DNA of 64,000 nt from positions 124,001 to 188,000 of the IMG/VR virus record IMGVR_UViG_3300017917_003143. One strand, given 5' to 3'. The position numbers and the translations under genes are program-made. Within the stretch, counting starts at the first letter, position 1; each line of letters starts with the position of its first letter. Under the pieces are notes generated by a model. The model saw only the letters and a program-made list of their open reading frames with translations, had not been told where the DNA came from and did not search any database. Of this stretch, positions 1,037 through 21,999 are shown piece by piece.

Positions 1037-2248
1037 ATGAAAAAATTAGTGATCATCCCTGGTGGATTCCACCCCTATCATGCAGGGCACAAAGCACTGT
1101 ATGATGCCGCACGTGAAGCATTTCCGTCTGCTGATGTCTATGTGGCAGCCACAGATGATACCACAGGACGTCCGTTCCCATTTCGAACAAAGAAATTCTT
1201 GGCCCAGCAGGCAGGCATTCCGGGCAATAGATTTATCCAGGTAAAATCACCTTTCAGTGCTGAAGAAATCACACAGCATTTTGACCCTACGGAAACACAG
1301 TTGATTTTTGTGCGTTCAGAAAAAGATCGCGACCAGAATCCACAGCCTGGACAACCAGGACAGATCGTCACCCGTGGACCACGCAAGGGCATGGCTCCTT
1401 ATTTGCAGCCATACAAGCGCAACGGACTACAACCCATGAAAGATCATGCTTACATGACTTACTTGCCCACTGTGCAGTTTGGTCCTGGCATGACATCGGC
1501 CACAGAAATACGTGCCAAATGGCCTACCATGGATGCCAAACAAAAGGCCGCACTAGCTGGAGTTTTGTATCCTTTGGCTGCCGACAACGAAGCCAAGATA
1601 GCCAAGATAGTAGAAATACTGGACACAGTCATGGGCGGAACTCCAGAAAAAACAGTAGACGAAGCTGTGTTGGTAAATGATCCTGACGCAGGACACCAAA
1701 TCATACCTGATGGTGGCATGGGTACCTGGGACGAAGCTTCCATGGTTTCTAATCTTTCTCGCAAGTTCGCCGACATGGTCAACATGGTCAAGAACAAAAA
1801 CTACACCGGACTACAGTATGTACTGTACAAGGGCGGTGTGGTCAAGAGCTTGGTAGATGCCCTAGCTGAATACGAAGTGTTCATGCAAAAACAAGGCCGC
1901 AGACCCATAGCACGTGGTCGTGAAATAGACATGGGCAAAACTGGAGTGGCCGAGCGTGTGCGTATGCGCATGCCCGTGGACGAAGCTCCGGACTATATCG
2001 AAGAAGGTGATGTGGTCCAATTCCCTGGAGATCGTGCCGCACCACCCGATGTAGCTCAAGCACATCAGTTGGCTACCCAGATCATTGACATAGCCAAAGA
2101 CGAAAAGATCCAGGATCCTGGCCCAAGATTGGCACCGCTACGCCAACAGCTACAACGCCTGGGTTACAGACTGCGCTTGGACAATGGCGGTATGCGATTG
2201 ATCCATAATACTACAAATTGGAATACCATCGTTGACCCAATGAAATAA
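1037..2248 (+). CDS. HxGH (cytidylyltransferase-like) nucleotidyltransferase with modular C-terminal extension
   Basis: PGGFHPYHAGH and TSATEIR motifs; tail punctuated by VDE/VAE/IEE. Confidence 0.7.
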   Translation: MKKLVIIPGGFHPYHAGHKALYDAAREAFPSADVYVAATDDTTGRPFPFRTKKFLAQQAGIPGNRFIQVKSPFSAEEITQHFDPTETQLIFVRSEKDRDQNPQPGQPGQIVTRGPRKGMAPYLQPYKRNGLQPMKDHAYMTYLPTVQFGPGMTSATEIRAKWPTMDAKQKAALAGVLYPLAADNEAKIAKIVEILDTVMGGTPEKTVDEAVLVNDPDAGHQIIPDGGMGTWDEASMVSNLSRKFADMVNMVKNKNYTGLQYVLYKGGVVKSLVDALAEYEVFMQKQGRRPIARGREIDMGKTGVAERVRMRMPVDEAPDYIEEGDVVQFPGDRAAPPDVAQAHQLATQIIDIAKDEKIQDPGPRLAPLRQQLQRLGYRLRLDNGGMRLIHNTTNWNTIVDPMK

Positions 2249-3273: not shown

Positions 3274-6200
3274 ATGGACATCTATGAATTAGACAGCTAC
3301 CGCCTGTCAGACGCGGTAAAGTTTCACACTGAACTCAATCCTGCACTTTGGGACGGCAAAACCATGCGTCCCGAAGTGCGCGAGGCCCTGCTTAAAATCG
3401 CTGATGATTTTAAGACCTTCATGGGCATCGATGATCTTGCCATAGAAGACATCACTGTTTCAGGCTCCAACACCGCGTTCTCATACACACCACATTCAGA
3501 CATTGATCTACATTTACTGGTTGATTTCAGCAAGCTCAATCCCGACGAAGTTTACCAAGAGCTTTTCAATGCTAAAAAATATCAATACAACGATCAACAC
3601 GATATAAAAATCAGAGGCTATGACGTCGAGCTCTATGTTCAAGACTCGAACAAACCTGTGCGTAGCCTTGGCGAATACAGTATCATCAACAATGACTGGA
3701 CTCGTATTCCAGTACAGCGCCGAGGCAATCTCGACGAAAAATCTACACAATCAAAATATGAAAAATTAAAAGGTTTGATTGAGCTTGCTACCAACAGCGA
3801 TGATCTACAACAAGTCACAGCAGTCACAGACACACTGAAAAAATATCGCCAGGCTGGGTTGGATGAGCATGGTGAATTTGGCCCAGAGAATCTGGCTTAT
3901 AAGATATTGCGAACACAGGGCTATGTAGAAAGATTATTCAAGCACAAGGCCAATCTCGAAGATGCGAAATTGAGCTTGGCTGAACGCAAAAAGAAGAAAA
4001 CAAAATCTAAAAAGAAATTCCGTTATGGTGCCTTTGGCGGATATTATTATCCCGGATACGGTTATTACGGACAGACTGATGCCGTGGCTGACGGTGGTGG
4101 CGATGGCGGTGGTGAATCAGTAAAAGAATCCACAGTCAATGTTGAAAAGAAATCGATTCCATTGGACAAAGTCGTGCGTCGTTTTGTACACTTTGCTGCC
4201 AAGCATCTTAAATTAAAACAATTACCAAAGATTAAATTACGAAAAGGTGAGCTCAGCCACGACATACATTCCATGGGACACTATGTGGATGATAAAAAGA
4301 CCGTGGAAGTAGAAACCAAGGATCGCCATGTCATGGATATCCTGCGTACCCTGGCACACGAACTCACACACTATAGACAGCATGAACGCTTGGGCAAAGA
4401 CATGCCTGACACAGCAGGACGCACAGGCAGTCCCTATGAGAATGAAGCCAACACATTGGCTGGCATCATCATGCGTCATTTCCAGAACAAGTATCCAGAA
4501 TTCTTTGCCAGCACTGTGAGCGAAGATGGTGACAGCGTGGCCGCCCAATACGGAGATCAGACTCCACCTGGACCAGAGTCCAAACCTACCATGCCCAAGG
4601 GAACGGTGCGGGTTGATGTGTCAGACGTTTACGACTGGTATAAACTGGGACAAAATATCAGCAACCTCGATAGAGTGGATCCTAAAATTTTTGGTAAAGG
4701 ACCACCCAGCACTATCGTCAGTTTTGGTGATGAAGAAACTGAACACAAGTACATCGACCATTTAAAAAAATTAGGGTTGACGACCACTGATATCGATCCT
4801 GTTGATCCCAATCAACCTCCTGGTATGCCGCGTCAAAAAGTTGATCCTACCTACAATGTAGACGAAACCATTGATGCTCCTGTGAGCAAAGATGCCAAGG
4901 CCAACCTTGACTACTACAAATTTATCCGTGGCAAACAGCAGTTGGGTCGCCCGCTGACCAAATCAGAAATGCAGTTCCTTAGCAAGTATCAACTCGCACA
5001 GCATCTTAAGAAACAAGTTGGTGAACAAGAACTCGAAGAAGGGATAGGTCGGGCATTGGGCACAGCCGCTGTGGCCGGTGCCATGGCCCTGGGGTCACCT
5101 GCTGCCAAAGCACAAAGCCCACTGCAAACAGCACACAACATTGGCAGTATAATTTACAACAAGAACATCACCCGAGCTGGCGCTGAAGAAGAGATCAAAG
5201 GCATGGCCAGAGATTTGGCACGTGGCGATCAAGAAATACGTGTGGGTGGCAAACGCATCTGGGGAGGCCCTCAAGCACAGGGTGAGCGAGTGGCAGCCAA
5301 TGGTGTAGGTGCCACTCCCGAAGCCGCATTCCAAGATGCGCTGAACAGAGCCTACACAGATGCCAATCGTCGTTACGGTCCTATCTCTGTAGGAGACTGG
5401 CGACCCATTGACCGAGAAAAAGAATTAGAACAAGTGGGTGGACAATATCGTGCGGCTGTGGTCATACAAGGTCCAGCACCTGTAAAAGAAGATGCGTCAG
5501 GTTATATTCCTACAAAAAAGCAGGCCAAGGATCCACGATTTAAAACAGCACTCACAGTGGATATCAAGCCTGGACAGTTAGGCAAAGAAGCCAACAAGCT
5601 GGGATTACAAACAGACAGCCAAGGTCGTCCTGATCTCTTGATGAAAAACTTGGCCAATGCGTTGAAAGAATACAAAGAGACCGGAGTGTTTGAAGCTGTC
5701 AAACCTGTTGCTCCTGTCATACCATCACGAGCACCCAAGACAGAATACCCACCCATGGTCAAGCAAAAGACCAGTCTACCTCAAGATAAACCGACACCGC
5801 GTCCAGACGGCACAGGTCGTATCATCAACTATGAAATACGAGAAGAAGAAGACTTGTTAGAAGTCAAAATGTCACCATCTTCTCTGGAAGCCTGGGCTCG
5901 TAGTCCCGAAGCTGAAGGCATACGTGCTGGATTTGAAGCCGAAATGATCTTCCGTGACACCAAGCGTGAAGACGATGAAGAGGAAATGGAGCCCGACTAC
6001 GACTATGACGAGCGTCCGGATGACATTGATCATGTCGTAGACTTCTTCTCTAATGACGATTATGGTTATGGCTTGAGCTCACGTGGTGCTAGAAGCCTGC
6101 GCGAAGATCTATTCAACGAATTTATTGAATGGGCTGATGAACAAATAGCAGAATCATGGGACAACAATGCTGAGGACCAAGTCAAGGACTACATGGAAAA

Positions 6201-8301
6201 CAACGTCTGGGGCGATGACGAAGAACGTGAAAAACGCATCGCTGACAAAATAGACGAACTGTTTCCTGACGAAGATCCAGAACCAATATTGGCAGCTGGC
6301 GCAGGTGCTCCAAGATTTACCCGTAGTTCAGACCAAACAGCATATACACAAGAAAACGATTTATATGCCAAATACCGAGAAGCTTCAGATGCGGCCTATG
6401 AAGAGTTTGAAGCTGAAGCCGAGAGCGAATACGAAAACCAAGGGCACTACTACGACGAAGCTCGCGACTACTACTTTGAAATGATGCGAGAAGGCGGCGA
6501 CTACGATGAACGAGAGTTCTTGCGTGACAAGTATGGTTACATGAGCGAGATCGCCAGCAGTTTCACTCTTGATTGGCCTTATTGGACCGGGGGTGGTAAT
6601 TCAGGCTACGGCAGTAGAGATTGGGAAGATATCGCCACCAGCTTAGAACGTGCTGTGAGAATGGATGTCAAAGTAGGATCAGGCTATCACTCTGTGACCC
6701 GCCGAGACGATCGTTATATCATAGAACCTGACGGATCGTTAGACCCTGATGACTACGAGGATGCCGGTCTTGAAATCGTAAGTCCGCCAATGCCATTGCC
6801 CACGGCCTTGGACCAGTTGCAGAAAGTCATAGAGTGGGGCAACAATACAGCCGACGCCTATACCAATGATTCAACAGGTCTTCACATGGGCGTGAGCATA
6901 CCTTATGTGGGCGGTGATGTTGACTATGTCAAGCTGGTGTTGTTCATGGGCGACGAATATGTGCTAGAAAAATTTGGCCGTGCGTCAAACACCTACACAG
7001 CATCGGCCATGCAGAAGCTACGTCAAAACATGGCAGGTGCCAGAAACCGTGGCGAACTCACAGAAGCCAAGTTAGACCCCTTGGGTGCATTAGAGTTAGT
7101 ACAAAAGAATCTCATTGAGCTGGCCGCAAGATATGTGCAGAATGGTGTAGGTAATTCAAAATACACTTCAGCCCACATCAAAGATGGCTACATCGAGTTC
7201 CGTAGCCCCGGTGGAGACTACTTGGCCATGGAGAGCCGTGGCGAGTTTGATGACATCAAGAACACCATGTTGCGTTTTGCTCGTGCCATGCAGATCGCTG
7301 GCAACCCTGCTCTTGAGCGCAAAGAGTATGCCAAGAAACTCTACAAATTGATCTCACCAGGCGCACAAGACGATGGGTTAAAACTGTTTTCCCAATACGC
7401 CGCAGGTACTATCAGCCCTGAACAGCTCAAGAAGCAGTGGGCCGACGCTGTGCTACAGAAAGAGCTACCCACCACAGGCAAAGAAGAATACGAAGTCTAT
7501 AGCATGGATAAAAAGAATAGCCCCGACGGCATCATTGATACATTCTATGCCAGAGACTACGACAGTGCCTATGACCAGTACAGGAAGAAATACAGCAATG
7601 ATCCACGCTGGAACCAACTTGATGTGCGTTTAAAGATGCCTTGGTTTGATGTGTATGGACCCGACGGTGAGGAAGTCGCGACCATAAGATCTCGAGATAT
7701 CAATCAAGCCAAAGAAAAGGCCATGAACCAGTTTGAATACTGGTCAGACGATTGGAAAATATATCGCAGGCCCGATAACACACCCGAACCAAAGTTAAGT
7801 GTACGAGCTCAAGTGGCCAAGCGTATCAAAGAGCCTAAAGTAAGCCCAGCACAGGCCGCAGACAATGCCCGGGATTCCCAACAGCTACAAGCTCGCATAG
7901 GAGAACCACGACCCGCTGGTGCTGTGGGCGACACTGGCTACTATCGCGTGACTTGGGATGAACGCAGGGACGGTGAGATACGCAGTGATGCACTGAACAT
8001 AGATGCACCCAACGCCACAGCGGCCATGGATCGTGTGCGTGATGCACTGCAACTGCAAGGTCGAGATATCGTACAGATATCAGCTGATGCACAACAACCT
8101 CCAGCTTGGCGAGATCAATTGGCCCAACAAGTTCGTACAGCATCACCTCGCGCCAACTATGAATTGTATCAATACGATGATCCAACACGAGTAATAGGCG
8201 TGATGCATCATGCCACAGCTGATGAAGTACGTGCATACATTGATCAACAAGAACAAGAAGGCATGCCTCCAGGATTTTTACGAGTAAGACAGGTATCATG
8301 A
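3274..8301 (+). CDS. 1675 aa polyvalent protein: Pol-beta-type nucleotidyltransferase + HExxH zincin + amidoligase-like domain + repeats
   Basis: GS..SDIDLH (DID at 3499-3507); AHELTH (4357-4371); GFEAE/DGSL/GLEIVSPP/STGLHMGVS/IEFR. Confidence 0.75.
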   Translation: MDIYELDSYRLSDAVKFHTELNPALWDGKTMRPEVREALLKIADDFKTFMGIDDLAIEDITVSGSNTAFSYTPHSDIDLHLLVDFSKLNPDEVYQELFNAKKYQYNDQHDIKIRGYDVELYVQDSNKPVRSLGEYSIINNDWTRIPVQRRGNLDEKSTQSKYEKLKGLIELATNSDDLQQVTAVTDTLKKYRQAGLDEHGEFGPENLAYKILRTQGYVERLFKHKANLEDAKLSLAERKKKKTKSKKKFRYGAFGGYYYPGYGYYGQTDAVADGGGDGGGESVKESTVNVEKKSIPLDKVVRRFVHFAAKHLKLKQLPKIKLRKGELSHDIHSMGHYVDDKKTVEVETKDRHVMDILRTLAHELTHYRQHERLGKDMPDTAGRTGSPYENEANTLAGIIMRHFQNKYPEFFASTVSEDGDSVAAQYGDQTPPGPESKPTMPKGTVRVDVSDVYDWYKLGQNISNLDRVDPKIFGKGPPSTIVSFGDEETEHKYIDHLKKLGLTTTDIDPVDPNQPPGMPRQKVDPTYNVDETIDAPVSKDAKANLDYYKFIRGKQQLGRPLTKSEMQFLSKYQLAQHLKKQVGEQELEEGIGRALGTAAVAGAMALGSPAAKAQSPLQTAHNIGSIIYNKNITRAGAEEEIKGMARDLARGDQEIRVGGKRIWGGPQAQGERVAANGVGATPEAAFQDALNRAYTDANRRYGPISVGDWRPIDREKELEQVGGQYRAAVVIQGPAPVKEDASGYIPTKKQAKDPRFKTALTVDIKPGQLGKEANKLGLQTDSQGRPDLLMKNLANALKEYKETGVFEAVKPVAPVIPSRAPKTEYPPMVKQKTSLPQDKPTPRPDGTGRIINYEIREEEDLLEVKMSPSSLEAWARSPEAEGIRAGFEAEMIFRDTKREDDEEEMEPDYDYDERPDDIDHVVDFFSNDDYGYGLSSRGARSLREDLFNEFIEWADEQIAESWDNNAEDQVKDYMENNVWGDDEEREKRIADKIDELFPDEDPEPILAAGAGAPRFTRSSDQTAYTQENDLYAKYREASDAAYEEFEAEAESEYENQGHYYDEARDYYFEMMREGGDYDEREFLRDKYGYMSEIASSFTLDWPYWTGGGNSGYGSRDWEDIATSLERAVRMDVKVGSGYHSVTRRDDRYIIEPDGSLDPDDYEDAGLEIVSPPMPLPTALDQLQKVIEWGNNTADAYTNDSTGLHMGVSIPYVGGDVDYVKLVLFMGDEYVLEKFGRASNTYTASAMQKLRQNMAGARNRGELTEAKLDPLGALELVQKNLIELAARYVQNGVGNSKYTSAHIKDGYIEFRSPGGDYLAMESRGEFDDIKNTMLRFARAMQIAGNPALERKEYAKKLYKLISPGAQDDGLKLFSQYAAGTISPEQLKKQWADAVLQKELPTTGKEEYEVYSMDKKNSPDGIIDTFYARDYDSAYDQYRKKYSNDPRWNQLDVRLKMPWFDVYGPDGEEVATIRSRDINQAKEKAMNQFEYWSDDWKIYRRPDNTPEPKLSVRAQVAKRIKEPKVSPAQAADNARDSQQLQARIGEPRPAGAVGDTGYYRVTWDERRDGEIRSDALNIDAPNATAAMDRVRDALQLQGRDIVQISADAQQPPAWRDQLAQQVRTASPRANYELYQYDDPTRVIGVMHHATADEVRAYIDQQEQEGMPPGFLRVRQVS

Positions 8302-9074
8302 GAGCATCTGAATTTTCAAACTCCAAGCTGGTGATCTTTGACATTGATGATACCTTGGTCAACACAGATACACGGGTAAATGTCGTGCGAGATGGCGAAG
8401 TGATCAAGCAACTCAACAGCCACGATTTTACACACTATAAATTAGGCCCTGGTGAAGAGTTTGACTTTGGTGCGTTCAAAGACGCCAGAGAATTCTTTAC
8501 CAAGGCCAAGCCAATACCTGGTATGATTCGACAACTAAAGCATGACATCGACACAGGAAATAAAGTTATCATGCTCACTGCCCGTAGTGATTTCAATGAC
8601 CGAGACATATTCTTAGATACTTTCCGACGCTTTGGTATAGAAATGGATCGTGTGCATGTGTATCGTGCCGGCAACTTGACCATCAAAGCTGCCACAGAAG
8701 AAAAGAAAAAGATCATGTTGCGTCATTTGTTGGGCAAGACGCACTATGACAAAATTATAATGTATGATGACAGTGTGCCTAATTTAAATGCATTTATAAG
8801 TCTTAAACAAGAATACCCTTGGAGCAAATTTTATGCTTGGCATGTGGATCCCAATGGGCAAGCCAGTGAATACCACAGAACAGATATGGAAGAAAACTTT
8901 CACGATGGCCGAGTAAAAGGCAAAAGTCGCCCAGGACGTGTCAAACGTGCAGGTGCCAGCTGTGCAGGAAGTGTCACGGACCTACGAGCAAAAGCCCGTA
9001 AATATGGCGGCGAGCGAGGCAAGATGTATCACTGGTGTGCCAACATGAAGAGTGGTCGCAAAAAGAATAAGTAA
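8298..9074 (+). CDS. HAD-superfamily phosphatase (PNK-phosphatase-like) plus basic Cys-containing tail
   Basis: LVIFDIDDTLV, MLTAR, MYDD motifs. Confidence 0.75.
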   Translation: MRASEFSNSKLVIFDIDDTLVNTDTRVNVVRDGEVIKQLNSHDFTHYKLGPGEEFDFGAFKDAREFFTKAKPIPGMIRQLKHDIDTGNKVIMLTARSDFNDRDIFLDTFRRFGIEMDRVHVYRAGNLTIKAATEEKKKIMLRHLLGKTHYDKIIMYDDSVPNLNAFISLKQEYPWSKFYAWHVDPNGQASEYHRTDMEENFHDGRVKGKSRPGRVKRAGASCAGSVTDLRAKARKYGGERGKMYHWCANMKSGRKKNK

Positions 9075-9080
9075 TACATT

Positions 9081-9263
9081 ATGCGAGCACAAGAACTCAC
9101 TGGACACAAATGGATCTCCAAGATCACCATCAAGAACCCTAACTACACAGGCAGGGTTGAAGTGTCGGTGTATGCTCACAATCAAAGTGAAGCACGACAA
9201 CTGTTAAAAGCACAGTACGGCATAGAAGATCATCACATTGGCGCCATCAGGAGAGCTCAATGA
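9081..9263 (+). CDS. small MRAxE-type protein
   Basis: 60 aa, starts MRAQEL. Confidence 0.7.
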   Translation: MRAQELTGHKWISKITIKNPNYTGRVEVSVYAHNQSEARQLLKAQYGIEDHHIGAIRRAQ

Positions 9264-9577
9264 GAGCCACTGAATTTGTCGCTGAAGATCTCAATGCCGG
9301 TGGATTCCGTATCCGTGTGAGTCCGCACTTGGAAAACCGCGCAGAGAAGCGTGGCATATCCATGCCCGTGATTGTAGGCATACTCAATAGGCTGGATCGT
9401 GCCCGTAGACATATCAAAGAGTTGGATCCTAACACACAATTTAATATTTTTGATAGCCATCACAACATACACCTTGGCATGATGCGTTCAGCATTTGATC
9501 CCAACAAACTGTTGTTGAACACAGTGTATCAAAATGAAAACTATCACGGGCGTAATCCTGTGTTGAAGGTACGGTAA
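9260..9577 (+). CDS. MRAxE-type protein, possible DUF4258/BECR-like nuclease
   Basis: VSPHLENRAEKRGIS resembles H-x3-R-x3-R-x-I motif. Confidence 0.4.
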   Translation: MRATEFVAEDLNAGGFRIRVSPHLENRAEKRGISMPVIVGILNRLDRARRHIKELDPNTQFNIFDSHHNIHLGMMRSAFDPNKLLLNTVYQNENYHGRNPVLKVR

Positions 9578-10179
9578 TGAGAGCATGGGAGTTGGGTGAG
9601 GTGCAGATACTACGCAAGGTCCAGAAAAAAGGCCGCAATCTCTATCAATTGCCTCGCCGTGGAAAGCCTATACCACAGGGTTGGGAATCTGAATATCTTG
9701 GTTTTCCAGTGGGTCGTACCAGCGGGCTAGAAATATGGCAGTTCAATGAAGGTCCTGTGACATCATACACTGTGTTTGATCCTGAGTCACGCAGAGCCAC
9801 CCTGACTATCAGTGGAAGCAAGTACCCTGACAATCCTGACAGTTTCATCGTGTTTGGTCTATATGCCGCACCTGGCAATCCTGTGCGAGCCGCAGACTTT
9901 TACCGATATCTTATTACCAAGCAAGGCTTGACCATGATATCTGATCGACTGCAGAGTCCAGGTGGATTGCGAGTGTGGCAAGAGTTGGAACGTAGATTTC
10001 CACAGAGCGTCACTGTATACGGGTTTGATACCAAGACCGATGAACCCATAAACATTTCAACACAAGACACATCAGACACACACGTAGAACCCGATGAGGT
10101 AGATCAAGCCGCACCTGGCATGAAGCGAGATCTACAGCATAAAGCACGTTACATTAGATTGGTAGCCACAGCAAGATGA
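9577..10179 (+). CDS. MRAxE-type protein, possible GNAT-like fold
   Basis: FYRYL...SDRLQSPGGLRVWQEL pattern. Confidence 0.35.
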   Translation: MRAWELGEVQILRKVQKKGRNLYQLPRRGKPIPQGWESEYLGFPVGRTSGLEIWQFNEGPVTSYTVFDPESRRATLTISGSKYPDNPDSFIVFGLYAAPGNPVRAADFYRYLITKQGLTMISDRLQSPGGLRVWQELERRFPQSVTVYGFDTKTDEPINISTQDTSDTHVEPDEVDQAAPGMKRDLQHKARYIRLVATAR

Positions 10180-10814
10180 GAGCACAAGATTTTATTCCTA
10201 CCAATCGAGAGTTTATACTCTATATCAACGGACGACCTGCAGTAAAGTATCAGCACGAAGGTGATGCCTTGCGAGACATGGATCACCTACGAAGAAAAGA
10301 TCCTAACACACGATTAGAGCTCAAACATGAAGTGTGTGGCATTGAAACTCTCCGCAAGATCAACGAATACAAGATTAACAATCAATCAGGCATCGGTTCT
10401 GTGCCCAAGAATCAAGACATTGATTATTTTGGACTGCGTGTGGCCATGCGCCCTAGCACGTTCCTTAAGCTCAGTCTGCCTTTGCCCAATACGCCTCAAG
10501 ATCAGCAGTCTATCGAATATGTCAAACAACACAAAGACACCGAAGGTATAGGCGCACCTTTCCTGGAAATAGACGTTCCTCAAGGCTGGGAGTCCGGTGA
10601 TTTATCTAAACCTGCCAGGGTGGTAGGGCACGATGGACGACACAGGATGGCTGCTATATTGCAGAGCGAAGGCGACGATCCTGTGGAAACACACATATTC
10701 CCTTTGGGACTGCGCCGCCGTCATTTTGATGCCAATCCTGAATGGGCCAAAGAACTCAATCAAGTCATCATTGGCCAGCGCGGCAACACTGTGCCAGGCC
10801 CTATTTTTAAGTAA
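10176..10814 (+). CDS. ParB/Srx-like domain protein
   Basis: VVGHDGRHRMAAI (DGxHR). Confidence 0.6.
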   Translation: MRAQDFIPTNREFILYINGRPAVKYQHEGDALRDMDHLRRKDPNTRLELKHEVCGIETLRKINEYKINNQSGIGSVPKNQDIDYFGLRVAMRPSTFLKLSLPLPNTPQDQQSIEYVKQHKDTEGIGAPFLEIDVPQGWESGDLSKPARVVGHDGRHRMAAILQSEGDDPVETHIFPLGLRRRHFDANPEWAKELNQVIIGQRGNTVPGPIFK

Positions 10815-13920: not shown

Positions 13921-14089
13921 ATTCATAGTGGAAACCACGGTTAGCGGCGGCATAGCCCCTGTGGTCATGCCCATAGGAGACATGCTGTCAAGAACCCAGC
14001 CTACAGCGCCCGTAGATAAATATAAAAAGAATTCAAGAAAGAAGAAACCCAATGCTGTCAGACGATTTGAAAACTCTATTAGCCAGTAA
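13907..14089 (+). CDS. small MRAxE-type protein (MRAHEFIVE)
   Basis: start moved to ATG 13907 on the motif. Confidence 0.65.
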   Translation: MRAHEFIVETTVSGGIAPVVMPIGDMLSRTQPTAPVDKYKKNSRKKKPNAVRRFENSISQ

Positions 14090-14492
14090 CTTTGCTTACT
14101 ACATCAAAGCACAGATGTTCCACTGGAACGTGGAAGGTCCTGATTTCGTGCAACTGCACGAACTCTTTGCCAATGTCTACGAGTTTGCTTACAGTGGACA
14201 TGACAAAGTGGCAGAGTACATCCGTACCATGGATGATTATGCTCCTGGCAGTCTTGAGCGTTTTTCCGAATTAAGTCAGATTCCTGGACAAACAAAGATT
14301 CCACGTGCCCGACTCATGATTGAAGAGCTGTTAAACGATACCGAAACATTGAAGGGCATCGTCATGCAGACTTTCCAGTCAGCACAAGCAGAAGGACGCG
14401 AAGACATCGCCAACTTCATGGCCGAGCGCCAAGATGGTCTGGGCAAATACACATGGCAGATACGTGCCACGCTAAAAGATTCGAGAGCATGA
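14052..14492 (+). CDS. dps: Dps/ferritin-like protein
   Basis: FHWNVEGPDFVQLHELF, DKVAE ferroxidase-type motifs. Confidence 0.9.
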   Translation: MLSDDLKTLLASNFAYYIKAQMFHWNVEGPDFVQLHELFANVYEFAYSGHDKVAEYIRTMDDYAPGSLERFSELSQIPGQTKIPRARLMIEELLNDTETLKGIVMQTFQSAQAEGREDIANFMAERQDGLGKYTWQIRATLKDSRA

Positions 14493-14493
14493 C

Positions 14494-15348
14494 ATGGCTG
14501 ATTTACGCAAGATCCTTGAATCCTTCTCCCGTATAGAACAAGAAAGCCTCAGCTCTCAGCAAAAGAGCGTGAAGCAACTGCCTGCCCTGTTCAAGCCACA
14601 AAAAACATCTCCACAGTTATCAGGCCCATATCCTGGCAAGAATGCCACCTTGGGTTATCTAGTGGGCGAAGGTGATGAGCAAGGTTATGGCAGTGAAGTT
14701 GGGGATACTGGCGCAGATGAAACACCAGATGGCGTAGATCCAGACACCAAATCATTCCTTGAAGGTAGATTAACAAATCCAGGTGAGCAAGACACTCCTG
14801 TGGCACAGGCTATAATACGTCGCATACTCACACAGAGACTTGACCTATTGTCTAAATACGGCCCTGAGTTGGTTGGCAGTGCTGTTGACGATGTCGCTGA
14901 CTGGGTTGGTGATGTAGAAGAAATAGGTACCAGTGATGTCAGTGGGTGGGTCAATCAAGTTGAACGCATGCTCAAAGAAAATCCACCTGAAGCGTTTGGT
15001 CTGTCAGAAGCACAAGCCACCGAAGACGTCATCTCTACAGTAAAGAAAAAGCTGGGCGACTATCTGTCCGACTTATCAAAAGAAATCAAATCAGACTCTG
15101 ACTTAAAAGACAAAATTCCGCAGGATGTAGATAAAATTTCTCCTGCTGTAAAGACCATTACAACTGATGATGGTAAAGAAATCAAGATACACGGCAACGA
15201 AGATGATGGTTTCCGTATCACCATACGAAATAAACCACACTCGGCAACTTTTGAAAGCCTGGACCATGCTGTCATGGCCTGTGAGATGTATTTGAATCGC
15301 CGCAGAATGCGCATGCCACACAACGAAGATTACTTGGAAGAACAATAA
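14494..15348 (+). CDS. modular hypothetical protein
   Basis: 284 aa; segments bounded by VGE/FLE/LSE/LEE. Confidence 0.7.
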   Translation: MADLRKILESFSRIEQESLSSQQKSVKQLPALFKPQKTSPQLSGPYPGKNATLGYLVGEGDEQGYGSEVGDTGADETPDGVDPDTKSFLEGRLTNPGEQDTPVAQAIIRRILTQRLDLLSKYGPELVGSAVDDVADWVGDVEEIGTSDVSGWVNQVERMLKENPPEAFGLSEAQATEDVISTVKKKLGDYLSDLSKEIKSDSDLKDKIPQDVDKISPAVKTITTDDGKEIKIHGNEDDGFRITIRNKPHSATFESLDHAVMACEMYLNRRRMRMPHNEDYLEEQ

Positions 15349-18300
15349 TGAATTTACTGAACTTGATCGAAGACACTACCACAGGTTACGATAACTTACG
15401 AGCCTTGATGCAAGCCTCGCAATCAGGGCAGGATGCTGTGCTTACAGTGGGTGGCGAAACTGTTACCTTGGATCCAATGGAAACACGTTGGATGTTTGGC
15501 AAATACAAAGCGTTCAACAAAGCCGGCCGCCAAGAAGAATTCTTGAATCACTTGGCTGATCCTGTGAAATTTGATCAGCACATGAAACAACTGCGCCAAC
15601 TCATTGACAAACAAAAGAACTTCCGTGGCTCAGTGCCCGGTGAGCGTGGTGTGGAAGAAAACATAGTGGCCGGCATCGTTGGCCATGAGATTAAAAAATT
15701 CCTTGACGAGCCTACCCCCAACAATAATGTAGCAGAAGAAGAAGCAGTAGAAGAAATTGCCATGAACAATCCCGATCAACCCACTGCGCAAACAGCAGGT
15801 AAGATCAACTGGGAACGCATGATCAAAGATTACATGGACAATAAACCCTACAGTGAATTTGAATTCCCTAGTGATCGTCCACTCACACTTTATCGTTCGC
15901 AAGTCTATGCCATACTCAAAGACTTTGGACGCATGAAGCCGCAACAAAAAGTCAACTTGATTCTTAATACCTTTGGTGACAAGTATGCCATGGTTGATTA
16001 CATCGACAAACTGCGTAGCAAAGGCATGATGCCCAAGAAAGTTCCTGCGTACAAAGCTCCCGGTGTTGAAGCGCCAGCTCCTGGTCAGATGACGTTGCCT
16101 GGTATGGATGTTCCCAAGATCAAAGAAGCCCAGGCTCAAAAAAAAAATTCTGACAAAGCAGGTTTAGACCGCGATACCGCGATAAACCCCAGAGTAGCTC
16201 GTGCTCTACAGTTGGCCCGAGCTCGACAGAGCGCAGCCGGCAGTGACATTGAAGCCTTTGTACAAGACGAACTAGAAAAAGCTCAGTCTGCACAGGCGCA
16301 GATCGATCAACTTGAAAAAGACAATCAACAACAGGCTGATCAGATATCACGCTTGTCGTCACAGCTATCTCAGCAAGATCAGGAAATACAACAGATCAAG
16401 AGCCAGCCAGAGCCAGAACCTCAATCACCTGCTCCAGCAGTGCAACCGGCACCTACACCAGCACCTGCTGAGCCTGATGCCAAGGCTCAACCAGCTCCTA
16501 AATCCACCGAGCCTGCCAAGACTGAACCCACAGCAGAACCACAACCCGTGCCTGTGCCACAACGGCAACCTGCGCCCAAGGCCAAGAAAACACCCAAAAA
16601 ACGTACCACTCGTAAAAAGGCTCCAGCAACTACGCCTGACAATGTCATACCATTTCCAGGCAAGAAAAAAACACCCGCAGATGATGAATTGTCAGCGGCC
16701 TTGCAAGGTGTTGACATGGATTCCGACGATCTGTTTGCCCGAGCAGTGGGTATGAACGAAGACACTGGCGATCTGAATGTTGGCGATCCTGTGATCATCC
16801 GTGGCAACGTAGAGTTTGAAGGCAAGACCGGCGATGTCGCAGGTTTTGGACGAGACAAACACTTTGTCATAGTGGATCTGTATAACTTTGGCAAACATGC
16901 GTTCCATGCTTCCAATGTCAAGTACAACGAATATGCTGATCAAGAAGTAGACGAAGGACGTTTAAAAAACGATGAACTCGAGCGCCAGTGGCAAGCTGGA
17001 CAACAGGCCACACGCAGTTTCCAGAATCGCGAACGCACTGCTGGTGAAGAAGAACCAGTAGGTGACTTCCGTGTGGTACGCCGCAAAGATGGTGTAGTAG
17101 GCGATCTCAAACAGCACTACAGTTCCAACGAAGCATTCCGTCATGCACGAGCACTCAAGAAAAAATATCCCAGCATGGAAGTAGGTGTGAAGTGGCCTAC
17201 AGGACAAATCAACTGGGTAGGACTGACCTTTGAGGACGATGTCACAGAGATGCAGACCAAGCTGGACAGATACAATGTCAATCAGCCTCCTCCGGGCGGT
17301 ACCAACAAGCAACGTGAACAGTTTTTAGATGCTCGAGACAAGTTGTTCCGATTGATGAAAAATGCTTCTACAGCAGACAAAGAAGTTATCAGACTCAAGA
17401 TAGCAGATCTAGAAGCCAAGGCACAGGCCAAAGGTATCAAGATACGAGAAGCTGGAGAGTTTAATCGTAGTGGATACAATGCCATCAAAGATGTCAGCGA
17501 CTGGCGTGAAAAAATCCGTGTGATGCAAGAGCTTATGAAGGATCGTGCTCTTATGAGCGATCCCGAAGCCAAAGCGGCCATTGAACAACGCATTGGAGAT
17601 CTGATCCGTGTGGGCCAAGAACAAGGCTATGTCACAGAAGCTCTCAGCGATAAAGCTATGTCTGTATTACGTGGACTCAAGAGCCAACCACAAGCCACCC
17701 AACCTGCCGCAATGGATCCTGCTAAACAAGCAGAGGTTGATGCTTGGGCACGAGATGTTGAGCGCAATCTTGCTCCTAAACTAAAACCACAAGCAGTCGC
17801 AAAGCCTGCGATTGACCTCAATGTTCCTCAACCAAAAAACATTGAAGATACGTTGCCTGATGATTTGCCAACCTTGCAACGTCGCATCAAGCAGTTGGAC
17901 GAGTTGATCAAAATGAAAGAGATGATCGACAAGTTATTCTTGAAAGCACAGAATGTGCGTGGTGGCATCTATCCAGGCTTGCAAAGTGACATCGAAGACG
18001 AAGAGATGTACGGTGTTCCAACCAATGATCAAGACTTTGAGGAATTGAAAAACAAGTACACACGAGACTTGGCAGCACTGCAAAAGTTTTTGGCCATGAA
18101 GAAGGCTGTGTATCGTGAAGATGAAGAACTCGTCGGCGAAAGCGCCGCTCTTGTAAGACTACAACGAGCACGTCAGCAGTTGGCACAGCAAGGCGTGGCA
18201 GAAGCACAAACAGATTATCAAAAGCGTAGACAGCGTGAGCGTGATGTAGACGCAGGTAAGCCTGTGAGCCGTCAACCCAAGAATCCACAGAATGACTATT

Positions 18301-18653
18301 TTGCTCGCCGCAAAAAAGAAAAAAAGCATGACATGGAAGAGCAGAAAGACAAAGCCGGCAATCCAATGTATCGCCGTGAAGAAGTCTACATGGTAGTACA
18401 CAATGGCAAGGAAGTAGCATTCTACAAACCCGAAAGCATGGCACGAGCCTACAGCGATGCCGAAGATCTCGTCAAGCGTTTTGGTGGCGAAGCTCATGTA
18501 AAGAAAGTCATGCGCGAAGCAAAAAAGAAAGATCGCAGTCCAGGTAAGATAACCAAGAGCGAAGATCCTTGCTGGTCAGGTTATCACATGGTAGGCAAGA
18601 AAATAAAGAACGGTCGTGAAGTTCCTAACTGCGTACCGGGTAAGAAAGGTTAA
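15348..18653 (+). CDS. 1101 aa modular protein: coiled coil, Pro/Ala/Gln-rich linker, KOW/SH3-like module, basic C-terminal modules
   Basis: ORF track; VGDPVII..G..G.V pattern; PAP-rich tract about 16390-16630. Confidence 0.75.
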   Translation: MNLLNLIEDTTTGYDNLRALMQASQSGQDAVLTVGGETVTLDPMETRWMFGKYKAFNKAGRQEEFLNHLADPVKFDQHMKQLRQLIDKQKNFRGSVPGERGVEENIVAGIVGHEIKKFLDEPTPNNNVAEEEAVEEIAMNNPDQPTAQTAGKINWERMIKDYMDNKPYSEFEFPSDRPLTLYRSQVYAILKDFGRMKPQQKVNLILNTFGDKYAMVDYIDKLRSKGMMPKKVPAYKAPGVEAPAPGQMTLPGMDVPKIKEAQAQKKNSDKAGLDRDTAINPRVARALQLARARQSAAGSDIEAFVQDELEKAQSAQAQIDQLEKDNQQQADQISRLSSQLSQQDQEIQQIKSQPEPEPQSPAPAVQPAPTPAPAEPDAKAQPAPKSTEPAKTEPTAEPQPVPVPQRQPAPKAKKTPKKRTTRKKAPATTPDNVIPFPGKKKTPADDELSAALQGVDMDSDDLFARAVGMNEDTGDLNVGDPVIIRGNVEFEGKTGDVAGFGRDKHFVIVDLYNFGKHAFHASNVKYNEYADQEVDEGRLKNDELERQWQAGQQATRSFQNRERTAGEEEPVGDFRVVRRKDGVVGDLKQHYSSNEAFRHARALKKKYPSMEVGVKWPTGQINWVGLTFEDDVTEMQTKLDRYNVNQPPPGGTNKQREQFLDARDKLFRLMKNASTADKEVIRLKIADLEAKAQAKGIKIREAGEFNRSGYNAIKDVSDWREKIRVMQELMKDRALMSDPEAKAAIEQRIGDLIRVGQEQGYVTEALSDKAMSVLRGLKSQPQATQPAAMDPAKQAEVDAWARDVERNLAPKLKPQAVAKPAIDLNVPQPKNIEDTLPDDLPTLQRRIKQLDELIKMKEMIDKLFLKAQNVRGGIYPGLQSDIEDEEMYGVPTNDQDFEELKNKYTRDLAALQKFLAMKKAVYREDEELVGESAALVRLQRARQQLAQQGVAEAQTDYQKRRQRERDVDAGKPVSRQPKNPQNDYFARRKKEKKHDMEEQKDKAGNPMYRREEVYMVVHNGKEVAFYKPESMARAYSDAEDLVKRFGGEAHVKKVMREAKKKDRSPGKITKSEDPCWSGYHMVGKKIKNGREVPNCVPGKKG

Positions 18654-18757: not shown

Positions 18758-19165
18758 ATGAGAAACTATATCAATTTGATGGAAGCTCTGGAAAAAGGTT
18801 GTCCACCAGCAACACAGAGCATCAAACTCAATCTTGAAAATCGCCAAAAGGCCATAGATGAGTATGGCCACGGTCCATTGAATCCCAATGAGCCCAATGA
18901 AGAGTTTTGGCAAGCCAAGGCTGACGAGTGGAACATATCTAATCCTGAAGATGCTAAATCAGCACGTTGCGGAAACTGTGCGGCGTTTGACATGAGTGAT
19001 GACATGATGGACTGTATCGCTAAAGGCATTGGTGCAGAACCTGGAAGTGATCCTCATGACACCATTGATGCTGGACATTTAGGTTATTGTAAGTTTCTCA
19101 AGTTTAAGTGTGCGGCCAAACGTACCTGCGATGCTTGGGTAGAAGGCGGACCTGTAACAAAATGA
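18758..19165 (+). CDS. Cys-rich protein, HiPIP-like Fe-S motif
   Basis: CGNCAAF...GYC...CDAW. Confidence 0.5.
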   Translation: MRNYINLMEALEKGCPPATQSIKLNLENRQKAIDEYGHGPLNPNEPNEEFWQAKADEWNISNPEDAKSARCGNCAAFDMSDDMMDCIAKGIGAEPGSDPHDTIDAGHLGYCKFLKFKCAAKRTCDAWVEGGPVTK

Positions 19166-19692
19166 GAGCTCAAGAATTTGTCAGCGAAAAGTGGAGCGAG
19201 AAATACAAACGCTCTATCAACTGTGCCAATCCCAAAGGATTCAGTCAACGAGCCCACTGTCAAGGTCGCAAAAAGAATGAAGATTTAAATGAATTCGCTC
19301 CAAGTGACAGCGGCGATGGTGATGACGGATTCAGTGATGACATGTTAAAACATCTTGCCGCACAGTGGTGGCACGGTGATGAAGACCCTAGAGTAGAACA
19401 AATACTGGCTGCGGCTGGTTGGGAAATAGGTCAAGACGAAGGCTACGACAATGGCGGAGTGTTTGTTGTACGAGCAGGAGATGTCAATGGCAACAGTTTT
19501 ATAAGTTGGCCAGCAGAAGAACTTGAAGTTGATCTGGAAGAACAGTTGACTTTCAAGGGCTCTCCTTGTACAGTAGATTGTTCAGGGCACAGAGCAGGTT
19601 ATGATTGGAGCCGCCGCAAAGGCATGCGTGTTCCAAATTCTTGGAGCCAGAGTTTCAACAACGGCGCCGCACTACACAGAGCAGGCAAATGA
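19162..19692 (+). CDS. MRAxE-type modular protein (MRAQEFVSE)
   Basis: start moved to ATG 19162; three modules split at NE/EE. Confidence 0.7.
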   Translation: MRAQEFVSEKWSEKYKRSINCANPKGFSQRAHCQGRKKNEDLNEFAPSDSGDGDDGFSDDMLKHLAAQWWHGDEDPRVEQILAAAGWEIGQDEGYDNGGVFVVRAGDVNGNSFISWPAEELEVDLEEQLTFKGSPCTVDCSGHRAGYDWSRRKGMRVPNSWSQSFNNGAALHRAGK

Positions 19693-20994: not shown

Positions 20995-21999
20995 ATGCAA
21001 CAGATTATCAAATTTTCCAATCTCAAACCTGTTCCCAAACCCCACCTCAAAGGAAAATTTTGTCCTGTACCCTTTACTGATATTTCTGTAGATCCTGATG
21101 GAAATTTCACCATGTGCAAATGCCAACTGCACATGCCATTTGTAGTAGGCAACACCAAGTCGACTACTATAGAACAAGCATGGAATTCAGATCTTGCCAA
21201 TGCTGTGCGAGATTCTGTGTTGACCGGAACATTCGATTACTGTAGTTGGAAGTGCCCTGGGCTCAAGGAATTACAAGACAGCGTACCGCCCGGAGTAAAG
21301 TCGTCAGGCTATCCAAAATGGATCAACATCAGCAACGATCTTTCTTGCAATCTAAAATGTCCTAGCTGTAGAGAACAAGTGATCATCGAAAAAGATCCTG
21401 CGGTGCTGGAAAAACAAAATCGACTCATTGATCAGATAGTTGGATTCAAAGAACCAGTGATAGTCAATCCCTGCAACAACGGTGAACCCTTGGTCAGCCC
21501 GTCTACCATGTATCTACTGAAGAACATAGACCAGATGGATCTCAAGCACGTGAAGCTGTACCTATCTACCAATGGTACATTGATCTATCGATATCGAGAG
21601 TTGATAGAATCGATCAGCGATCGCATAGTAGGCTTTGGCATCAGTATCGATGCGGCCACGGAACAAACCTATCAAAAGGTAAGAGGAGACTTGTGGAACG
21701 ATCTGATGCAAGGCATACGATGGTTGGGTACGCTGAACAAACCATTGCATCTGACTGCACGATTTGTAGTGCAAGGAAAGAACTATCACGAAATGCGAGA
21801 TTTTGTGCTCATGGTCAAAGAATTAGGATTCAAGGACGTGCATTTCCAATTGATAAGAGATTGGGGCCATTGGTCCGATCAGTGGTGGAATGAAAATCGA
21901 TTGTCTTTGGAAGAAATGCGATGTGTACAGCAACAGTCTCAGGCCATGAAAGAAGAATTTGGCAATTTTATCACGTTCGATTCGGAGTTTTTGATCTAA
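20995..21999 (+). CDS. radical SAM protein with N-terminal SPASM/Twitch-like Cys cluster
   Basis: CNLKCPSC; GEPL; STNG; CPVPF..DG...C. Confidence 0.8.
   Translation: MQQIIKFSNLKPVPKPHLKGKFCPVPFTDISVDPDGNFTMCKCQLHMPFVVGNTKSTTIEQAWNSDLANAVRDSVLTGTFDYCSWKCPGLKELQDSVPPGVKSSGYPKWINISNDLSCNLKCPSCREQVIIEKDPAVLEKQNRLIDQIVGFKEPVIVNPCNNGEPLVSPSTMYLLKNIDQMDLKHVKLYLSTNGTLIYRYRELIESISDRIVGFGISIDAATEQTYQKVRGDLWNDLMQGIRWLGTLNKPLHLTARFVVQGKNYHEMRDFVLMVKELGFKDVHFQLIRDWGHWSDQWWNENRLSLEEMRCVQQQSQAMKEEFGNFITFDSEFLI

What the first reader, a model, noticed from the sequence alone, without database searches (positions are those of the whole stretch)
15348..18653. Second bead-on-string protein of short modules bounded by xxE
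Seen: GVEE, AVEE, KIKE, GMNE, EVDE, DVTE, KIRE, YVTE, VYRE, GVAE, DMEE and VMRE separate 40-100 aa blocks. The blocks include a coiled coil, a Pro/Ala linker, a KOW/SH3-like block and basic tails. The same grammar appears in 14494..15348, 19162..19692 and the tails of 1037..2248 and 8298..9074. Inference: a pool of mix-and-match peptides released on head maturation, serving as scaffold, DNA-condensing or effector peptides.
Basis: partly seen in the sequence, partly recalled or inferred. Interest (0 to 1): 0.65.

Follow-up and report, generated by a model that had tools for sequence, protein, structure and literature searches.

The report
Mosaic phage polyprotein with protease-site joints
This 1101-residue gene of a 344-kb jumbo phage is one member of a large, undescribed family of proteins built from freely reshuffled small modules, each joined by a short hydrophobic-x-Glu motif that matches the cutting site of the phage's own T4-type head-maturation protease, so it probably is a polyprotein cut into many peptides inside the capsid (cleavage itself is not shown).

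Summary
All 12 tetrapeptides sit at the stated residues of ORF 15348..18653. Their raw number is not above chance (18 [LIVM]xE, 16.7 expected). Their positions are far from chance.

- A scan of 1.84 billion representative proteins gave 1202 relatives at E<=0.001. Most share single blocks.
- Homology stops at the xxE sites: 54% of 491 breakpoints lie within 5 residues of a site, against 20% for random positions.
- 96% of 108 adjacent module pairs carry the motif at the joint (32% expected).
- The top 150 proteins show 75 different module orders (A-L and L-A, S-Q and Q-S, C-S and S-C), so the blocks are not collinear.
- In six close homologs, whole cassettes come and go exactly after [VIL]xE, and the P1 Glu is invariant at six joints.

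The genome is a PA5oct/Rak2-like jumbo phage with a T4-type head module. That module includes a Peptidase_S77 (gp21-like) protease, which cuts after Glu. All 7 near-complete module-bearing genomes tested have S77. T4-like capsid-targeting leaders occur in the genome.

Best reading: a head-packaged polyprotein cut at the joints. Packaging, cleavage and module functions are inferred, not shown. One module is KOW/SH3-like; module A matched no solved structure.

The parts
14017..14023 (+). TAAATAT promoter-like motif, 29 nt upstream of the first gene of the operon that ends with the polyprotein gene
   Evidence: Of 63 copies in the genome, 33 are intergenic, while intergenic DNA is 5.2% of the genome. 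The motif also precedes the prohead-core/protease/scaffold/capsid operon and several large virion-gene operons. Late timing is inferred, not shown.
14052..14492 (+). Ferritin/Dps-like gene (146 aa), conserved first gene of the syntenic block
   Evidence: Pfam Ferritin 1.3e-12, phrog_3636. A 146-aa ORF stands in the same position in L002, L003, L007, L008 and L024.
14494..15348 (+). 284-aa acidic protein carrying module L (about residues 90-180). It ends in ..YLEE-Q and is translationally coupled to the next gene.
   Evidence: Module L occurs in 72 of 149 family proteins, often in the same polypeptide as module A. TAATG overlap.
15348..18653 (+). The mosaic polyprotein gene (P0001, 1101 aa)
   Evidence: No Pfam family. 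1202 relatives at E<=0.001 among 1.84 billion representatives.
15348..15371 (+). N-terminal leader MNLLNLIE (residues 1-8), ending in a site-like LIE
   Evidence: The same leader class, MN[LI]xx[LIM][IFY]E, precedes different first modules in other family members. The prohead-core-position protein of this genome starts MNKFEQLIE. T4 gp21 has LIE-9.
15372..15659 (+). Module A (residues 9-104), ending GERGVEE
   Evidence: 51 copies at N-terminal, internal and C-terminal positions. Motif upstream in 35/38 and downstream in 36/50, against 0.25 in controls. The model (pLDDT 86) is helix, hairpin, three helices with a flexible last 14 residues. No solved fold matched.
15660..15755 (+). Acidic variable linker (residues 105-136) with FLDE, NVAE and AVEE
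   Evidence: Partly absent in close homologs, and the sites are shifted rather than lost.
15756..16127 (+). Module B (residues 137-260), ending PKIKE
   Evidence: Found in 24 of 150 proteins. KIKE/RIKE is conserved in 5 homologs.
16128..16760 (+). Gln/Glu-rich helical stretch, Pro/Ala-rich linker and basic patch (residues 261-471), ending VGMNE
   Evidence: Sequence read directly; 29% Pro+Ala. G[ML]xE is conserved with P2 variable.
16761..16955 (+). Module S (residues 472-536): KOW/SH3-like five-stranded barrel with an acidic tail ending EVDE
   Evidence: 88 copies in 150 proteins. Motif upstream in 56/61. Model pLDDT 85. Foldseek best matches are Spt5/NusG KOW, ribosomal L24 and Tudor domains, TM 0.70-0.73, E about 2e-3.
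16956..17249 (+). Cassette T (residues 537-634), ending DDVTE
   Evidence: Present in P0001, L002 and L003; absent in L004, L007 and L008, with borders right after [VIL]xE.
17250..17450 (+). Module U (residues 635-701), basic, ending KIRE
   Evidence: L004 carries a 116-residue insertion directly after KIRE that itself ends GITE. E701 is invariant.
17451..17639 (+). Module V (residues 702-764), ending GYVTE
   Evidence: P3 varies V/I/L/M and P1 Glu is invariant in the homologs.
17640..18119 (+). Module W with a variable linker (residues 765-924), ending AVYRE
   Evidence: E924 is invariant.
18120..18203 (+). Short helical linker (residues 925-952), ending QGVAE; an insertion hot spot
   Evidence: L002, L007 and L008 carry inserts of 75-190 residues here, each flanked by a repeated QG[VM]AE or DMAE.
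18204..18341 (+). Module Q (residues 953-998), a basic peptide (AQTDYQKRR...), ending HDMEE
   Evidence: 51 copies. Motif upstream in 29/34 and downstream in 37/37. Net charge +5.
18342..18518 (+). Cassette R (residues 999-1057), ending KVMRE
   Evidence: Replaced by unrelated cassettes, or absent, in the five homologs.
18519..18650 (+). Module C (residues 1058-1101): basic two-Cys peptide, PCWxGY...VPNCVP
   Evidence: 29 copies at N-terminal, internal or C-terminal positions, followed by NEGVEE when internal. It is the only block found in cultured viruses: cyanophage S-CREM1 gp219 and the HSTV-1 head maturation protease protein. The five close homologs carry a different last module (DACYxKVK...WPSAYASG).
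19162..19692 (+). Small protein with a T4-CTS-like leader MRAQEFVSE and two modules from the shared pool
   Evidence: Its modules occur in 13 family proteins. Leader compared with T4 IPII/IPIII MKTYQEFIAE.
1037..2248 (+). HxGH nucleotidyltransferase-like protein with an xxE-rich tail
   Evidence: Its N-terminal domain is homologous (6.8e-54) to the first domain of polyprotein P0143, and also matches P0028 and P0103, where it stands behind an MFxxxLFE leader.

Best explanation
P0001 is a mosaic polyprotein of a T4-core jumbo phage. It is an N-terminal leader followed by about a dozen small modules, some folded and some basic peptides, drawn from a pool that related phages recombine freely. Every joint carries a [V/I/L/M]-x-Glu motif in a flexible linker.

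The proposed mechanism, which is inferred: the protein is made late with the head proteins and enters the prohead core, possibly through its leader. When the gp21-type (Peptidase_S77) prohead protease is activated, it cuts the protein after the joint glutamates. The modules are then freed inside the capsid, to stay with the DNA and be ejected into the host, or partly to be expelled like scaffold fragments.

Shown here: modularity, reshuffling, the joint motif, and the presence of the matching protease and of T4-like targeting leaders in the genome.

Inferred: packaging, cleavage, and what the modules do.
For: 1. Joints.
- Homology to 149 relatives ends at the xxE sites.
- 96% of 108 adjacent module pairs have the motif at the joint, against 32% expected.
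- Per-module flanks carry the motif in 85-100% of cases for A, S and Q, against 20-25% in control windows.
- At joints that carry the motif, P3 is L/V/I/M and P2 is free.
- In six close homologs P1 Glu is invariant while P3 varies within hydrophobic residues.
- After the Glu, the sequences diverge completely.
- Sites move rather than disappear (GVEE against GVTGD...QVNE).

2. The linker after module A is predicted flexible.

3. Matching protease.
- Peptidase_S77 scores 94 bits in this genome. It lies in a T4-order head module of portal, protease, scaffold-position protein and major capsid protein.
- The scaffold-position protein has 26 [LIVM]xE in 362 aa.
- S77-family proteases cut C-terminal to Glu after a short motif: T4 ITE-6, LTE-619 and LIE-9.
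- S77 was found in 13 of 16 module-bearing records and in 7 of 7 records that are at least 90% complete.

4. Targeting.
- Family members share short N-terminal leaders ending in the motif, whatever module follows.
- The genome also has near-T4 capsid-targeting leaders, MKTFAEYLTE and MRAQEFVSE, against T4 MKTYQEFIAE. Two of those proteins share modules with the family.

5. The operon is preceded by a TAAATAT motif that also precedes the head and tail operons.

6. Codons at the joint vary synonymously, so conservation acts on the protein.
Against: - There is no direct evidence that the protein is in virions or is cut. No cultured relative with a virion proteome carries modules A, S or Q.
- The gene lies about 146 kb from the head module, among genes that look metabolic or replicative.
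- The overall number of motifs in P0001 equals chance. Motifs also occur inside modules, so not every xxE can be a site.
- The P0001 leader MNLLNLIE is not the T4 capsid-targeting consensus.
- S77 co-occurrence is not independent evidence, because all carriers are related jumbo phages.
- The apparent depletion of the motif inside module A (4 against 60 expected) rests on homologous sequences and amounts to roughly one observation.
Confidence: 0.6

Rival explanations
1. The protein is a genuine reshuffled multi-domain protein, but it works intact. The hydrophobic-x-Glu at the joints would then be a structural linker or domain-capping signature, or a docking motif, not a cleavage site.
For: No cleavage data exist. 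Motifs also occur inside modules. The motif count equals chance. Many polyvalent phage proteins are delivered unprocessed.
Against: The same three-residue pattern flanks unrelated modules, both folded and disordered, with P1 Glu invariant, never Asp in the six homologs, and P2 free. That fits a protease site better than a structural cap. The linker is predicted flexible. The pattern equals the known specificity of the protease family that the genome encodes.
Confidence: 0.15
2. The protein is cut at the joints, but by another enzyme or outside the capsid. Candidates are the subtilase at 36101..38005, the HExxH-bearing 1675-aa protein at 3274..8301, or a host protease. It would then act as a cytoplasmic polyprotein.
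For: The window encodes a Peptidase_S8, and the 1675-aa protein carries an HExxH motif. The gene is far from the head module.
Against: Cutting after Glu with a hydrophobic P3 is the described signature of T4-type prohead proteases. From general knowledge, it is not typical of subtilases or zincins. T4-type leaders and the shared promoter-like motif point to the head.
Confidence: 0.1
3. It is an accessory scaffold or core protein. It is packaged and cut, but the pieces are mostly expelled during head expansion and have no role in the host.
For: T4 core proteins gp22, gp67 and gp68 are cut into short fragments that leave the head. Several linkers are acidic, like the prohead-core-position protein of this genome.
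Against: The modules are well conserved folded units (A, and the KOW-like S) or basic peptides. They are reshuffled at a high rate, and enzyme domains join the same arrays. This is unlike a scaffold, which is conserved and collinear: the genome's scaffold-position protein matches a PHROG family along its whole length.
Confidence: 0.1
4. The xxE pattern is a chance reading of a Glu-rich protein.
For: 18 motifs seen against 16.7 expected. N-terminal xxE is not enriched genome-wide (62 of 423 against 51-66).
Against:: the positions coincide with module borders far beyond chance (96% against 32%; 54% against 20%).
Confidence: 0.02

Closest known systems
T4 internal proteins IPI/IPII/IPIII and Alt (capsid-targeting sequence plus gp21 cleavage)
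   Same: A gp21-type protease is in the genome. Short N-terminal leaders end in hydrophobic-x-Glu. Cargo behind a shared leader varies rapidly. The genome also holds near-identical leader types (MKTFAEYLTE against T4 MKTYQEFIAE).
   Different: T4 proteins are single cargoes with one N-terminal site (Alt also has a C-terminal one). Here up to a dozen or more modules are strung together with a site at every joint. P0001's own leader differs from the T4 consensus. No packaging data exist.
T4 prohead core proteins gp22, gp67 and gp68 (cut into short fragments)
   Same: Many Glu-sites per protein and fragmentation into peptides. This genome's scaffold-position protein has 26 motifs in 362 aa.
   Different: Scaffolds are conserved, collinear and motif-dense (7.2%). 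P0001 has chance-level density (1.6%) with the sites concentrated at module borders, and its modules are shuffled.
Ejection and inner-body proteins of phiKZ, 201phi2-1 and SPN3US
   Same: Jumbo-phage head proteins cut after Glu by a gp21-related protease, with several sites per propeptide.
   Different: There the motif is A/S/G-x-E and cleavage removes an N-terminal propeptide, leaving one mature protein. No sequence similarity. The phage here is of the PA5oct/Rak2-like T4-core group.
Polyvalent proteins of phages and conjugative elements (Iyer et al. 2017, PMC5512222)
   Same: Large multi-domain phage proteins with highly variable domain order, thought to be packaged and delivered with the DNA. 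The paper itself draws the analogy to viral polyproteins.
   Different: Those are defined by known enzymatic and LPD domains, and processing is ascribed to an embedded zincin-like peptidase. P0001 has no Pfam domain at all, mostly very small modules, and joints that match the prohead protease.
Polyproteins of RNA viruses
   Same: One translation product, conserved short protease sites between functional units.
   Different: Unrelated proteases and domains. Here the array itself is combinatorially variable between close relatives.

Membership tests
Substrates of T4-type (Peptidase_S77) prohead proteases | The genome encodes an S77/gp21-type prohead protease | tested here: met
   PF03420 at 94.3 bits (cut-off 27) at G000 285393-285815. 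phrog_207 head maturation protease, 5.9e-56. It lies between the portal and the major capsid protein.
Substrates of T4-type (Peptidase_S77) prohead proteases | Hydrophobic(P3)-x-Glu(P1) motifs at the places where the protein would be cut | tested here: met
   The motif is at 96% of 108 module joints against 32% expected. At those sites P3 is L45 V29 I25 M13. P1 Glu is invariant at six joints in six homologs.
Substrates of T4-type (Peptidase_S77) prohead proteases | Cleavage at those sites demonstrated (semi-specific peptides, fragment sizes, or in vitro digestion) | not testable with these tools
   No proteome exists for this uncultured phage. No cultured phage carries modules A, S or Q.
Substrates of T4-type (Peptidase_S77) prohead proteases | The protein is present in proheads or virions | not testable with these tools
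   Indirect only: a TAAATAT motif shared with head and tail operons, and module sharing with leader-bearing proteins encoded next to virion genes.
T4 capsid-targeting-sequence (CTS) proteins | N-terminal leader of about 10 residues of the MKTYQEFIAE type, ending in the protease site | tested here: inconclusive
   P0001 starts MNLLNLIE. The site-like LIE-8 is present, but the T4 consensus is absent. The leader class is shared by family members with different first modules. True T4-like leaders occur on other genes of the genome.
Polyvalent proteins (Iyer et al. 2017) | Several known conflict-related enzymatic or LPD domains in one polypeptide, often with an embedded MPTase peptidase | tested here: not met
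   No Pfam family at E<=0.01 in P0001. Only chance-level hits (E 0.03-0.4, below the curated cut-offs) in four homologs. No PDB sequence match. The defining features are as described.
KOW / SH3-like barrel (module S only) | Five-stranded small barrel superimposable on KOW domains | tested here: met
   Model pLDDT 84.6. TM 0.70-0.73 and rmsd 1.6-2.0 over 55-59 residues to Spt5/NusG KOW, at E about 2e-3, just above the tool's 0.001 line.
KOW / SH3-like barrel (module S only) | Sequence membership in the Pfam KOW family | tested here: not met
   No Pfam hit for residues 440-540 even at E<=1. The block is fold-like, not a family member.

The most novel reading that the evidence does not exclude
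A clade of T4-core jumbo phages uses a polyprotein strategy that, as far as I could find, has not been described for dsDNA phages. A combinatorial library of small modules (peptides, small folded domains and some enzymes) is strung together behind a capsid-targeting leader, loaded into the prohead, and cut apart by the head-maturation protease at standard hydrophobic-x-Glu joints. This would give each phage lineage its own rapidly exchangeable set of injected peptides, for example counter-defence or DNA-handling factors.
Probability: 0.45. Interest if true: 0.9.

Novelty: new variant of a known kind. Interest (0 to 1): 0.8.

Why it matters
If these proteins are cut at the joints inside the head, then head-packaged cargo in large phages is not limited to single proteins with a targeting leader. 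It would include whole arrays of exchangeable modules, a cheap way to evolve and deliver many small factors at once.

The family is large: 1202 representative clusters at E<=0.001, and one representative stands for each cluster at 50% identity. None of its members seen here carries a Pfam domain or a functional name.

The joint motif gives a simple rule for splitting hundreds of uncharacterised jumbo-phage proteins into testable units. These include candidates for anti-defence peptides and DNA-binding peptides.

It also offers natural design rules (leader plus protease-site linkers) for loading several cargoes into T4-type capsids.

Tried and rejected
- **DNA match to cultured phages:** megablast of the gene and of 20 kb around it found nothing.
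- **Protein match to cultured phages:** tblastn of P0001 found only the last 25-64 residues. tblastn of the upstream 284-aa protein found nothing.
- **Family and structure databases:** Pfam gave nothing usable for P0001 or four homologs. The PDB sequence search gave nothing. The ESM Atlas feature search gave nothing.
- **Paralogs:** none of the P0001 modules recurs in the phage's own proteome.
- **Motif enrichment:** the simple count in P0001 is not enriched. A general enrichment of N-terminal xxE across all 423 ORFs was tested and rejected.
- **Fold of module A:** no convincing match. Foldseek PDB best E 0.85; VIA-align best Z 3.9; BFVD returns only uncharacterised uncultured-phage proteins.
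- **Late promoter:** the T4 late promoter TATAAATA is not used here, with 12 copies and none before head genes. The related TAAATAT is enriched instead.
- **Motif depletion inside module A:** 4 against 60 expected. I set it aside as weak because the 51 sequences are homologous.
- **Recombination linkers at DNA level:** unlikely. The codons vary, and the motif is three residues long.
- **Literature:** searches for a described phage polyprotein of this kind found none. The PA5oct virion paper does not treat proteolysis.
- **Not used:** the reads tools and complex prediction, because neither could show cleavage.

Full report
**What is there**

The window is bases 124001-188000 of a 343,632-bp virus record that is about 99% complete. 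ORF 15348..18653 (+) encodes 1101 residues, held as P0001. Its ATG overlaps the stop codon of the upstream ORF 14494..15348 (TAATG). That ORF follows a ferritin/Dps-like gene at 14052..14492.

The simple count is not a signal: 18 [LIVM]xE against 16.7 expected from shuffles. The question is therefore whether the positions mean anything.

**Close homologs**

Five related loci in IMG/VR keep the same gene order: a 146-aa ferritin-like ORF, a 270-311-aa ORF, then a long ORF. The six long proteins share a collinear core, but whole cassettes are present or absent, and every border falls right after a hydrophobic-x-Glu.

- Residues 537-634 (ending DVTE) are missing in three homologs.
- One homolog has 116 extra residues directly after KIRE, and that insert ends GITE.
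- Three homologs have different inserts at QGVAE, each flanked by a second QG[VM]AE or DMAE.
- After HDM[ED]E the tails differ completely.
- The last module of P0001 (PCWxGY...VPNCVP) is replaced in all five by another two-Cys module.
- The Glu at 471, 536, 701, 764, 924 and 952 is invariant, while P3 varies among V/I/L/M and P2 is free.
- Where a site is lost (GVEE becomes GVTGD), a new one appears a few residues on.

**The wider family**

A full HMMER scan of 1.84 billion representative proteins found 1202 relatives at E<=0.001 and 510 at E<=1e-10. Most match single blocks at varied positions.

- Internal ends of homology pile up at E8, E104, E471, E536, E952, E998 and E1057.
- Of 491 breakpoints, 54% lie within 5 residues of a motif, against 20% for random positions.
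- Module A (residues 9-104) occurs 51 times in the top 150 proteins, at the N-terminus, in the middle or near the C-terminus. It is typically preceded by ..GIKE and followed by GERG[VI]EE, after which the sequences diverge completely.
- For modules A, S and Q, the flanks carry the motif in 85-100% of cases on at least one side, against 20-25% for random windows in the same proteins.
- Across 108 adjacent module pairs, 96% have the motif at the joint against 32% expected. At those sites P3 is L/V/I/M.
- Using only modules known from this window, the 150 proteins show 75 different orders, including inversions: L-A and A-L, S-Q and Q-S, S-C and C-S.

**Neighbouring genes drawn from the same pool**

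- The upstream ORF 14494..15348 contributes a module found in 72 of the relatives.
- ORF 19162..19692 contributes modules found in 13.
- The nucleotidyltransferase domain of 1037..2248 is the first domain of three polyproteins.
- P0001 has no paralogs of its own modules within the genome.

**Structure**

- Module A folds with confidence (pLDDT 86) into a helix, a hairpin and three helices. Its last 14 residues (..GSVPGERGVEE) are flexible. No solved fold matches it.
- Module S (residues 472-536) is a five-stranded barrel whose best matches are KOW domains of Spt5/NusG, ribosomal L24 and Tudor domains, at TM 0.70-0.73.
- Modules U, Q and C are basic. The linkers and module S are acidic.

**The matching protease**

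The genome has a T4-order head module: portal, a small protein, an acidic core-position protein, a Peptidase_S77 protease (94 bits), a scaffold-position protein with 26 [LIVM]xE in 362 residues, and the major capsid protein.

The capsid protein is 67% identical to those of Vibrio phage 2.275.O, Sinorhizobium phage Phosso and Pseudomonas phage PA5oct. That places the phage among the Rak2/PA5oct-like T4-core jumbo phages.

T4-family prohead proteases cut C-terminal to Glu after a short motif. T4 examples are ITE-6 and LTE-619 in Alt and LIE-9 in gp21; phiKZ and SPN3US use S/A/G-x-E and A-x-E.

Of 16 records carrying modules A or S, 13 encode S77. All 7 records that are at least 90% complete do; the three without it are 30-65% complete. 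Because the carriers are all related jumbo phages, this co-occurrence is consistent with the model but is not independent proof.

**Targeting and timing**

- In T4 the first 10 residues of IPIII suffice for encapsidation.
- T4 IPII and IPIII start MKTYQEFIAE, and IPI starts MKTFKEF.
- This genome has MKTFAEYLTE, MKTLREYITE, MRAREF[VI]TE, MRATEFVAE and MRAQEFVSE.
- Two of those proteins share modules with the family.
- Family members carry a few leader classes (MNLLNLIE, MFxxxLFE, MKFF[KQ]E, MFALDLFN...LAE), whatever module follows.
- The core-position protein next to the protease starts MNKFEQLIE.
- A TAAATAT motif is ten-fold enriched in intergenic DNA. It precedes the head operon, several large virion-gene operons and the operon that ends with P0001. 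T4's own TATAAATA is not used.

These points support late, head-directed expression. They are inference.

**Verdict**

- The 'mix-and-match modules bounded by xxE' reading is strongly supported.
- 'Released on head maturation' is the best explanation (about 0.6) but is unproven.
- The proposed peptide functions are open.

**Rivals**

An uncut multi-domain protein, cleavage by another protease, a purely scaffold-like role, and chance are weighed in the Rival explanations section. Chance is excluded by the positional tests.

**Comparison with known systems**

It works like T4 capsid-targeted internal proteins and like the multi-site propeptides of phiKZ and SPN3US. It resembles the 'polyvalent proteins' in idea. 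It differs from all three:

- many shuffled small modules;
- a standard joint at each border;
- no known domains;
- a joint that matches the prohead protease rather than an embedded peptidase.

Literature searches found no description of such a family. That shows only that none is in the searched library.

**Limits of this work**

- The reads tools were not used.
- The T4 gp21 P3 preference for Leu/Ile is stated from the cited examples and from general knowledge of the family.

Noticed in passing
window 8298..10814 and 19162..19692; G000 320444-324464 (L034): A series of small genes starts with T4-like capsid-targeting leaders. Those ending in the site are MRATEFVAE (9260), MRAQEFVSE (19162), MKTFAEYLTE, MKTLREYITE and MRAREF[VI]TE. 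Weaker ones are MRASEF (8298), MRAQEL (9081), MRAWELGE (9577) and MRAQDF (10176). T4 IPII and IPIII start MKTYQEFIAE. These are probably an internal-protein repertoire.
   Followed up: partly
window 14017..14023 and 32 other intergenic places in G000: TAAATAT is about ten-fold enriched in intergenic DNA (33 of 63 copies in 5.2% of the genome). It lies 17-35 nt before the head operon, large virion-gene operons, window genes 2300 and 14052, and others. It is a candidate late promoter. T4's TATAAATA is not used.
   Followed up: partly
window 3274..8301: A 1675-aa protein with an N-terminal phrog_36119 region (SDIDLH, nucleotidyltransferase-like), an HELTH motif (HExxH) and a borderline Amidoligase_2 match (21.8 bits, cut-off 22). 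It looks like a polyvalent protein, and it starts MDIYE.
   Followed up: no
window 1037..2248: An HxGH nucleotidyltransferase-like enzyme. Its domain is also the first module of polyproteins P0143, P0028 and P0103, behind an MFxxxLFE leader. This suggests that enzymes, too, are loaded through these arrays.
   Followed up: partly
G000 285963-287051 (L033:6964-8052): The scaffold-position protein has 26 [LIVM]xE in 362 residues (7.2%, against about 1.5-2.5% in most other proteins of the genome). The capsid protein has four motifs in its first 44 residues (..YLKE-NASAG), consistent with a T4-like propeptide.
   Followed up: partly
L010 (Synechococcus phage S-CREM1 gp219) and L011 (halovirus HSTV-1 gene 13): The small two-Cys module PCWxGY...VPNCVP also sits inside a 783-aa bead-like protein of a T4-like cyanophage. 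It also sits between the protease part and the acidic tail of a haloarchaeal virus 'head maturation protease'. The module is therefore repeatedly tied to capsid-internal proteins.
   Followed up: partly
window 8298..9074, 18758..19165, 19162..19692; G000 322698-323372: Several unrelated short basic segments each have two Cys about 15-35 residues apart: modules C, D and X, the tail of 8298..9074, and RRRSFRARHNC...YWSCRAW. They form a recurring class of small basic two-Cys peptides of unknown role.
   Followed up: no
window 20995..21999, 36101..38005, 48888..50813: Auxiliary genes: a SPASM/radical-SAM protein, a Peptidase_S8 subtilase (634 aa) and a B12-binding radical-SAM protein. Their functions in this phage are unknown.
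   Followed up: no
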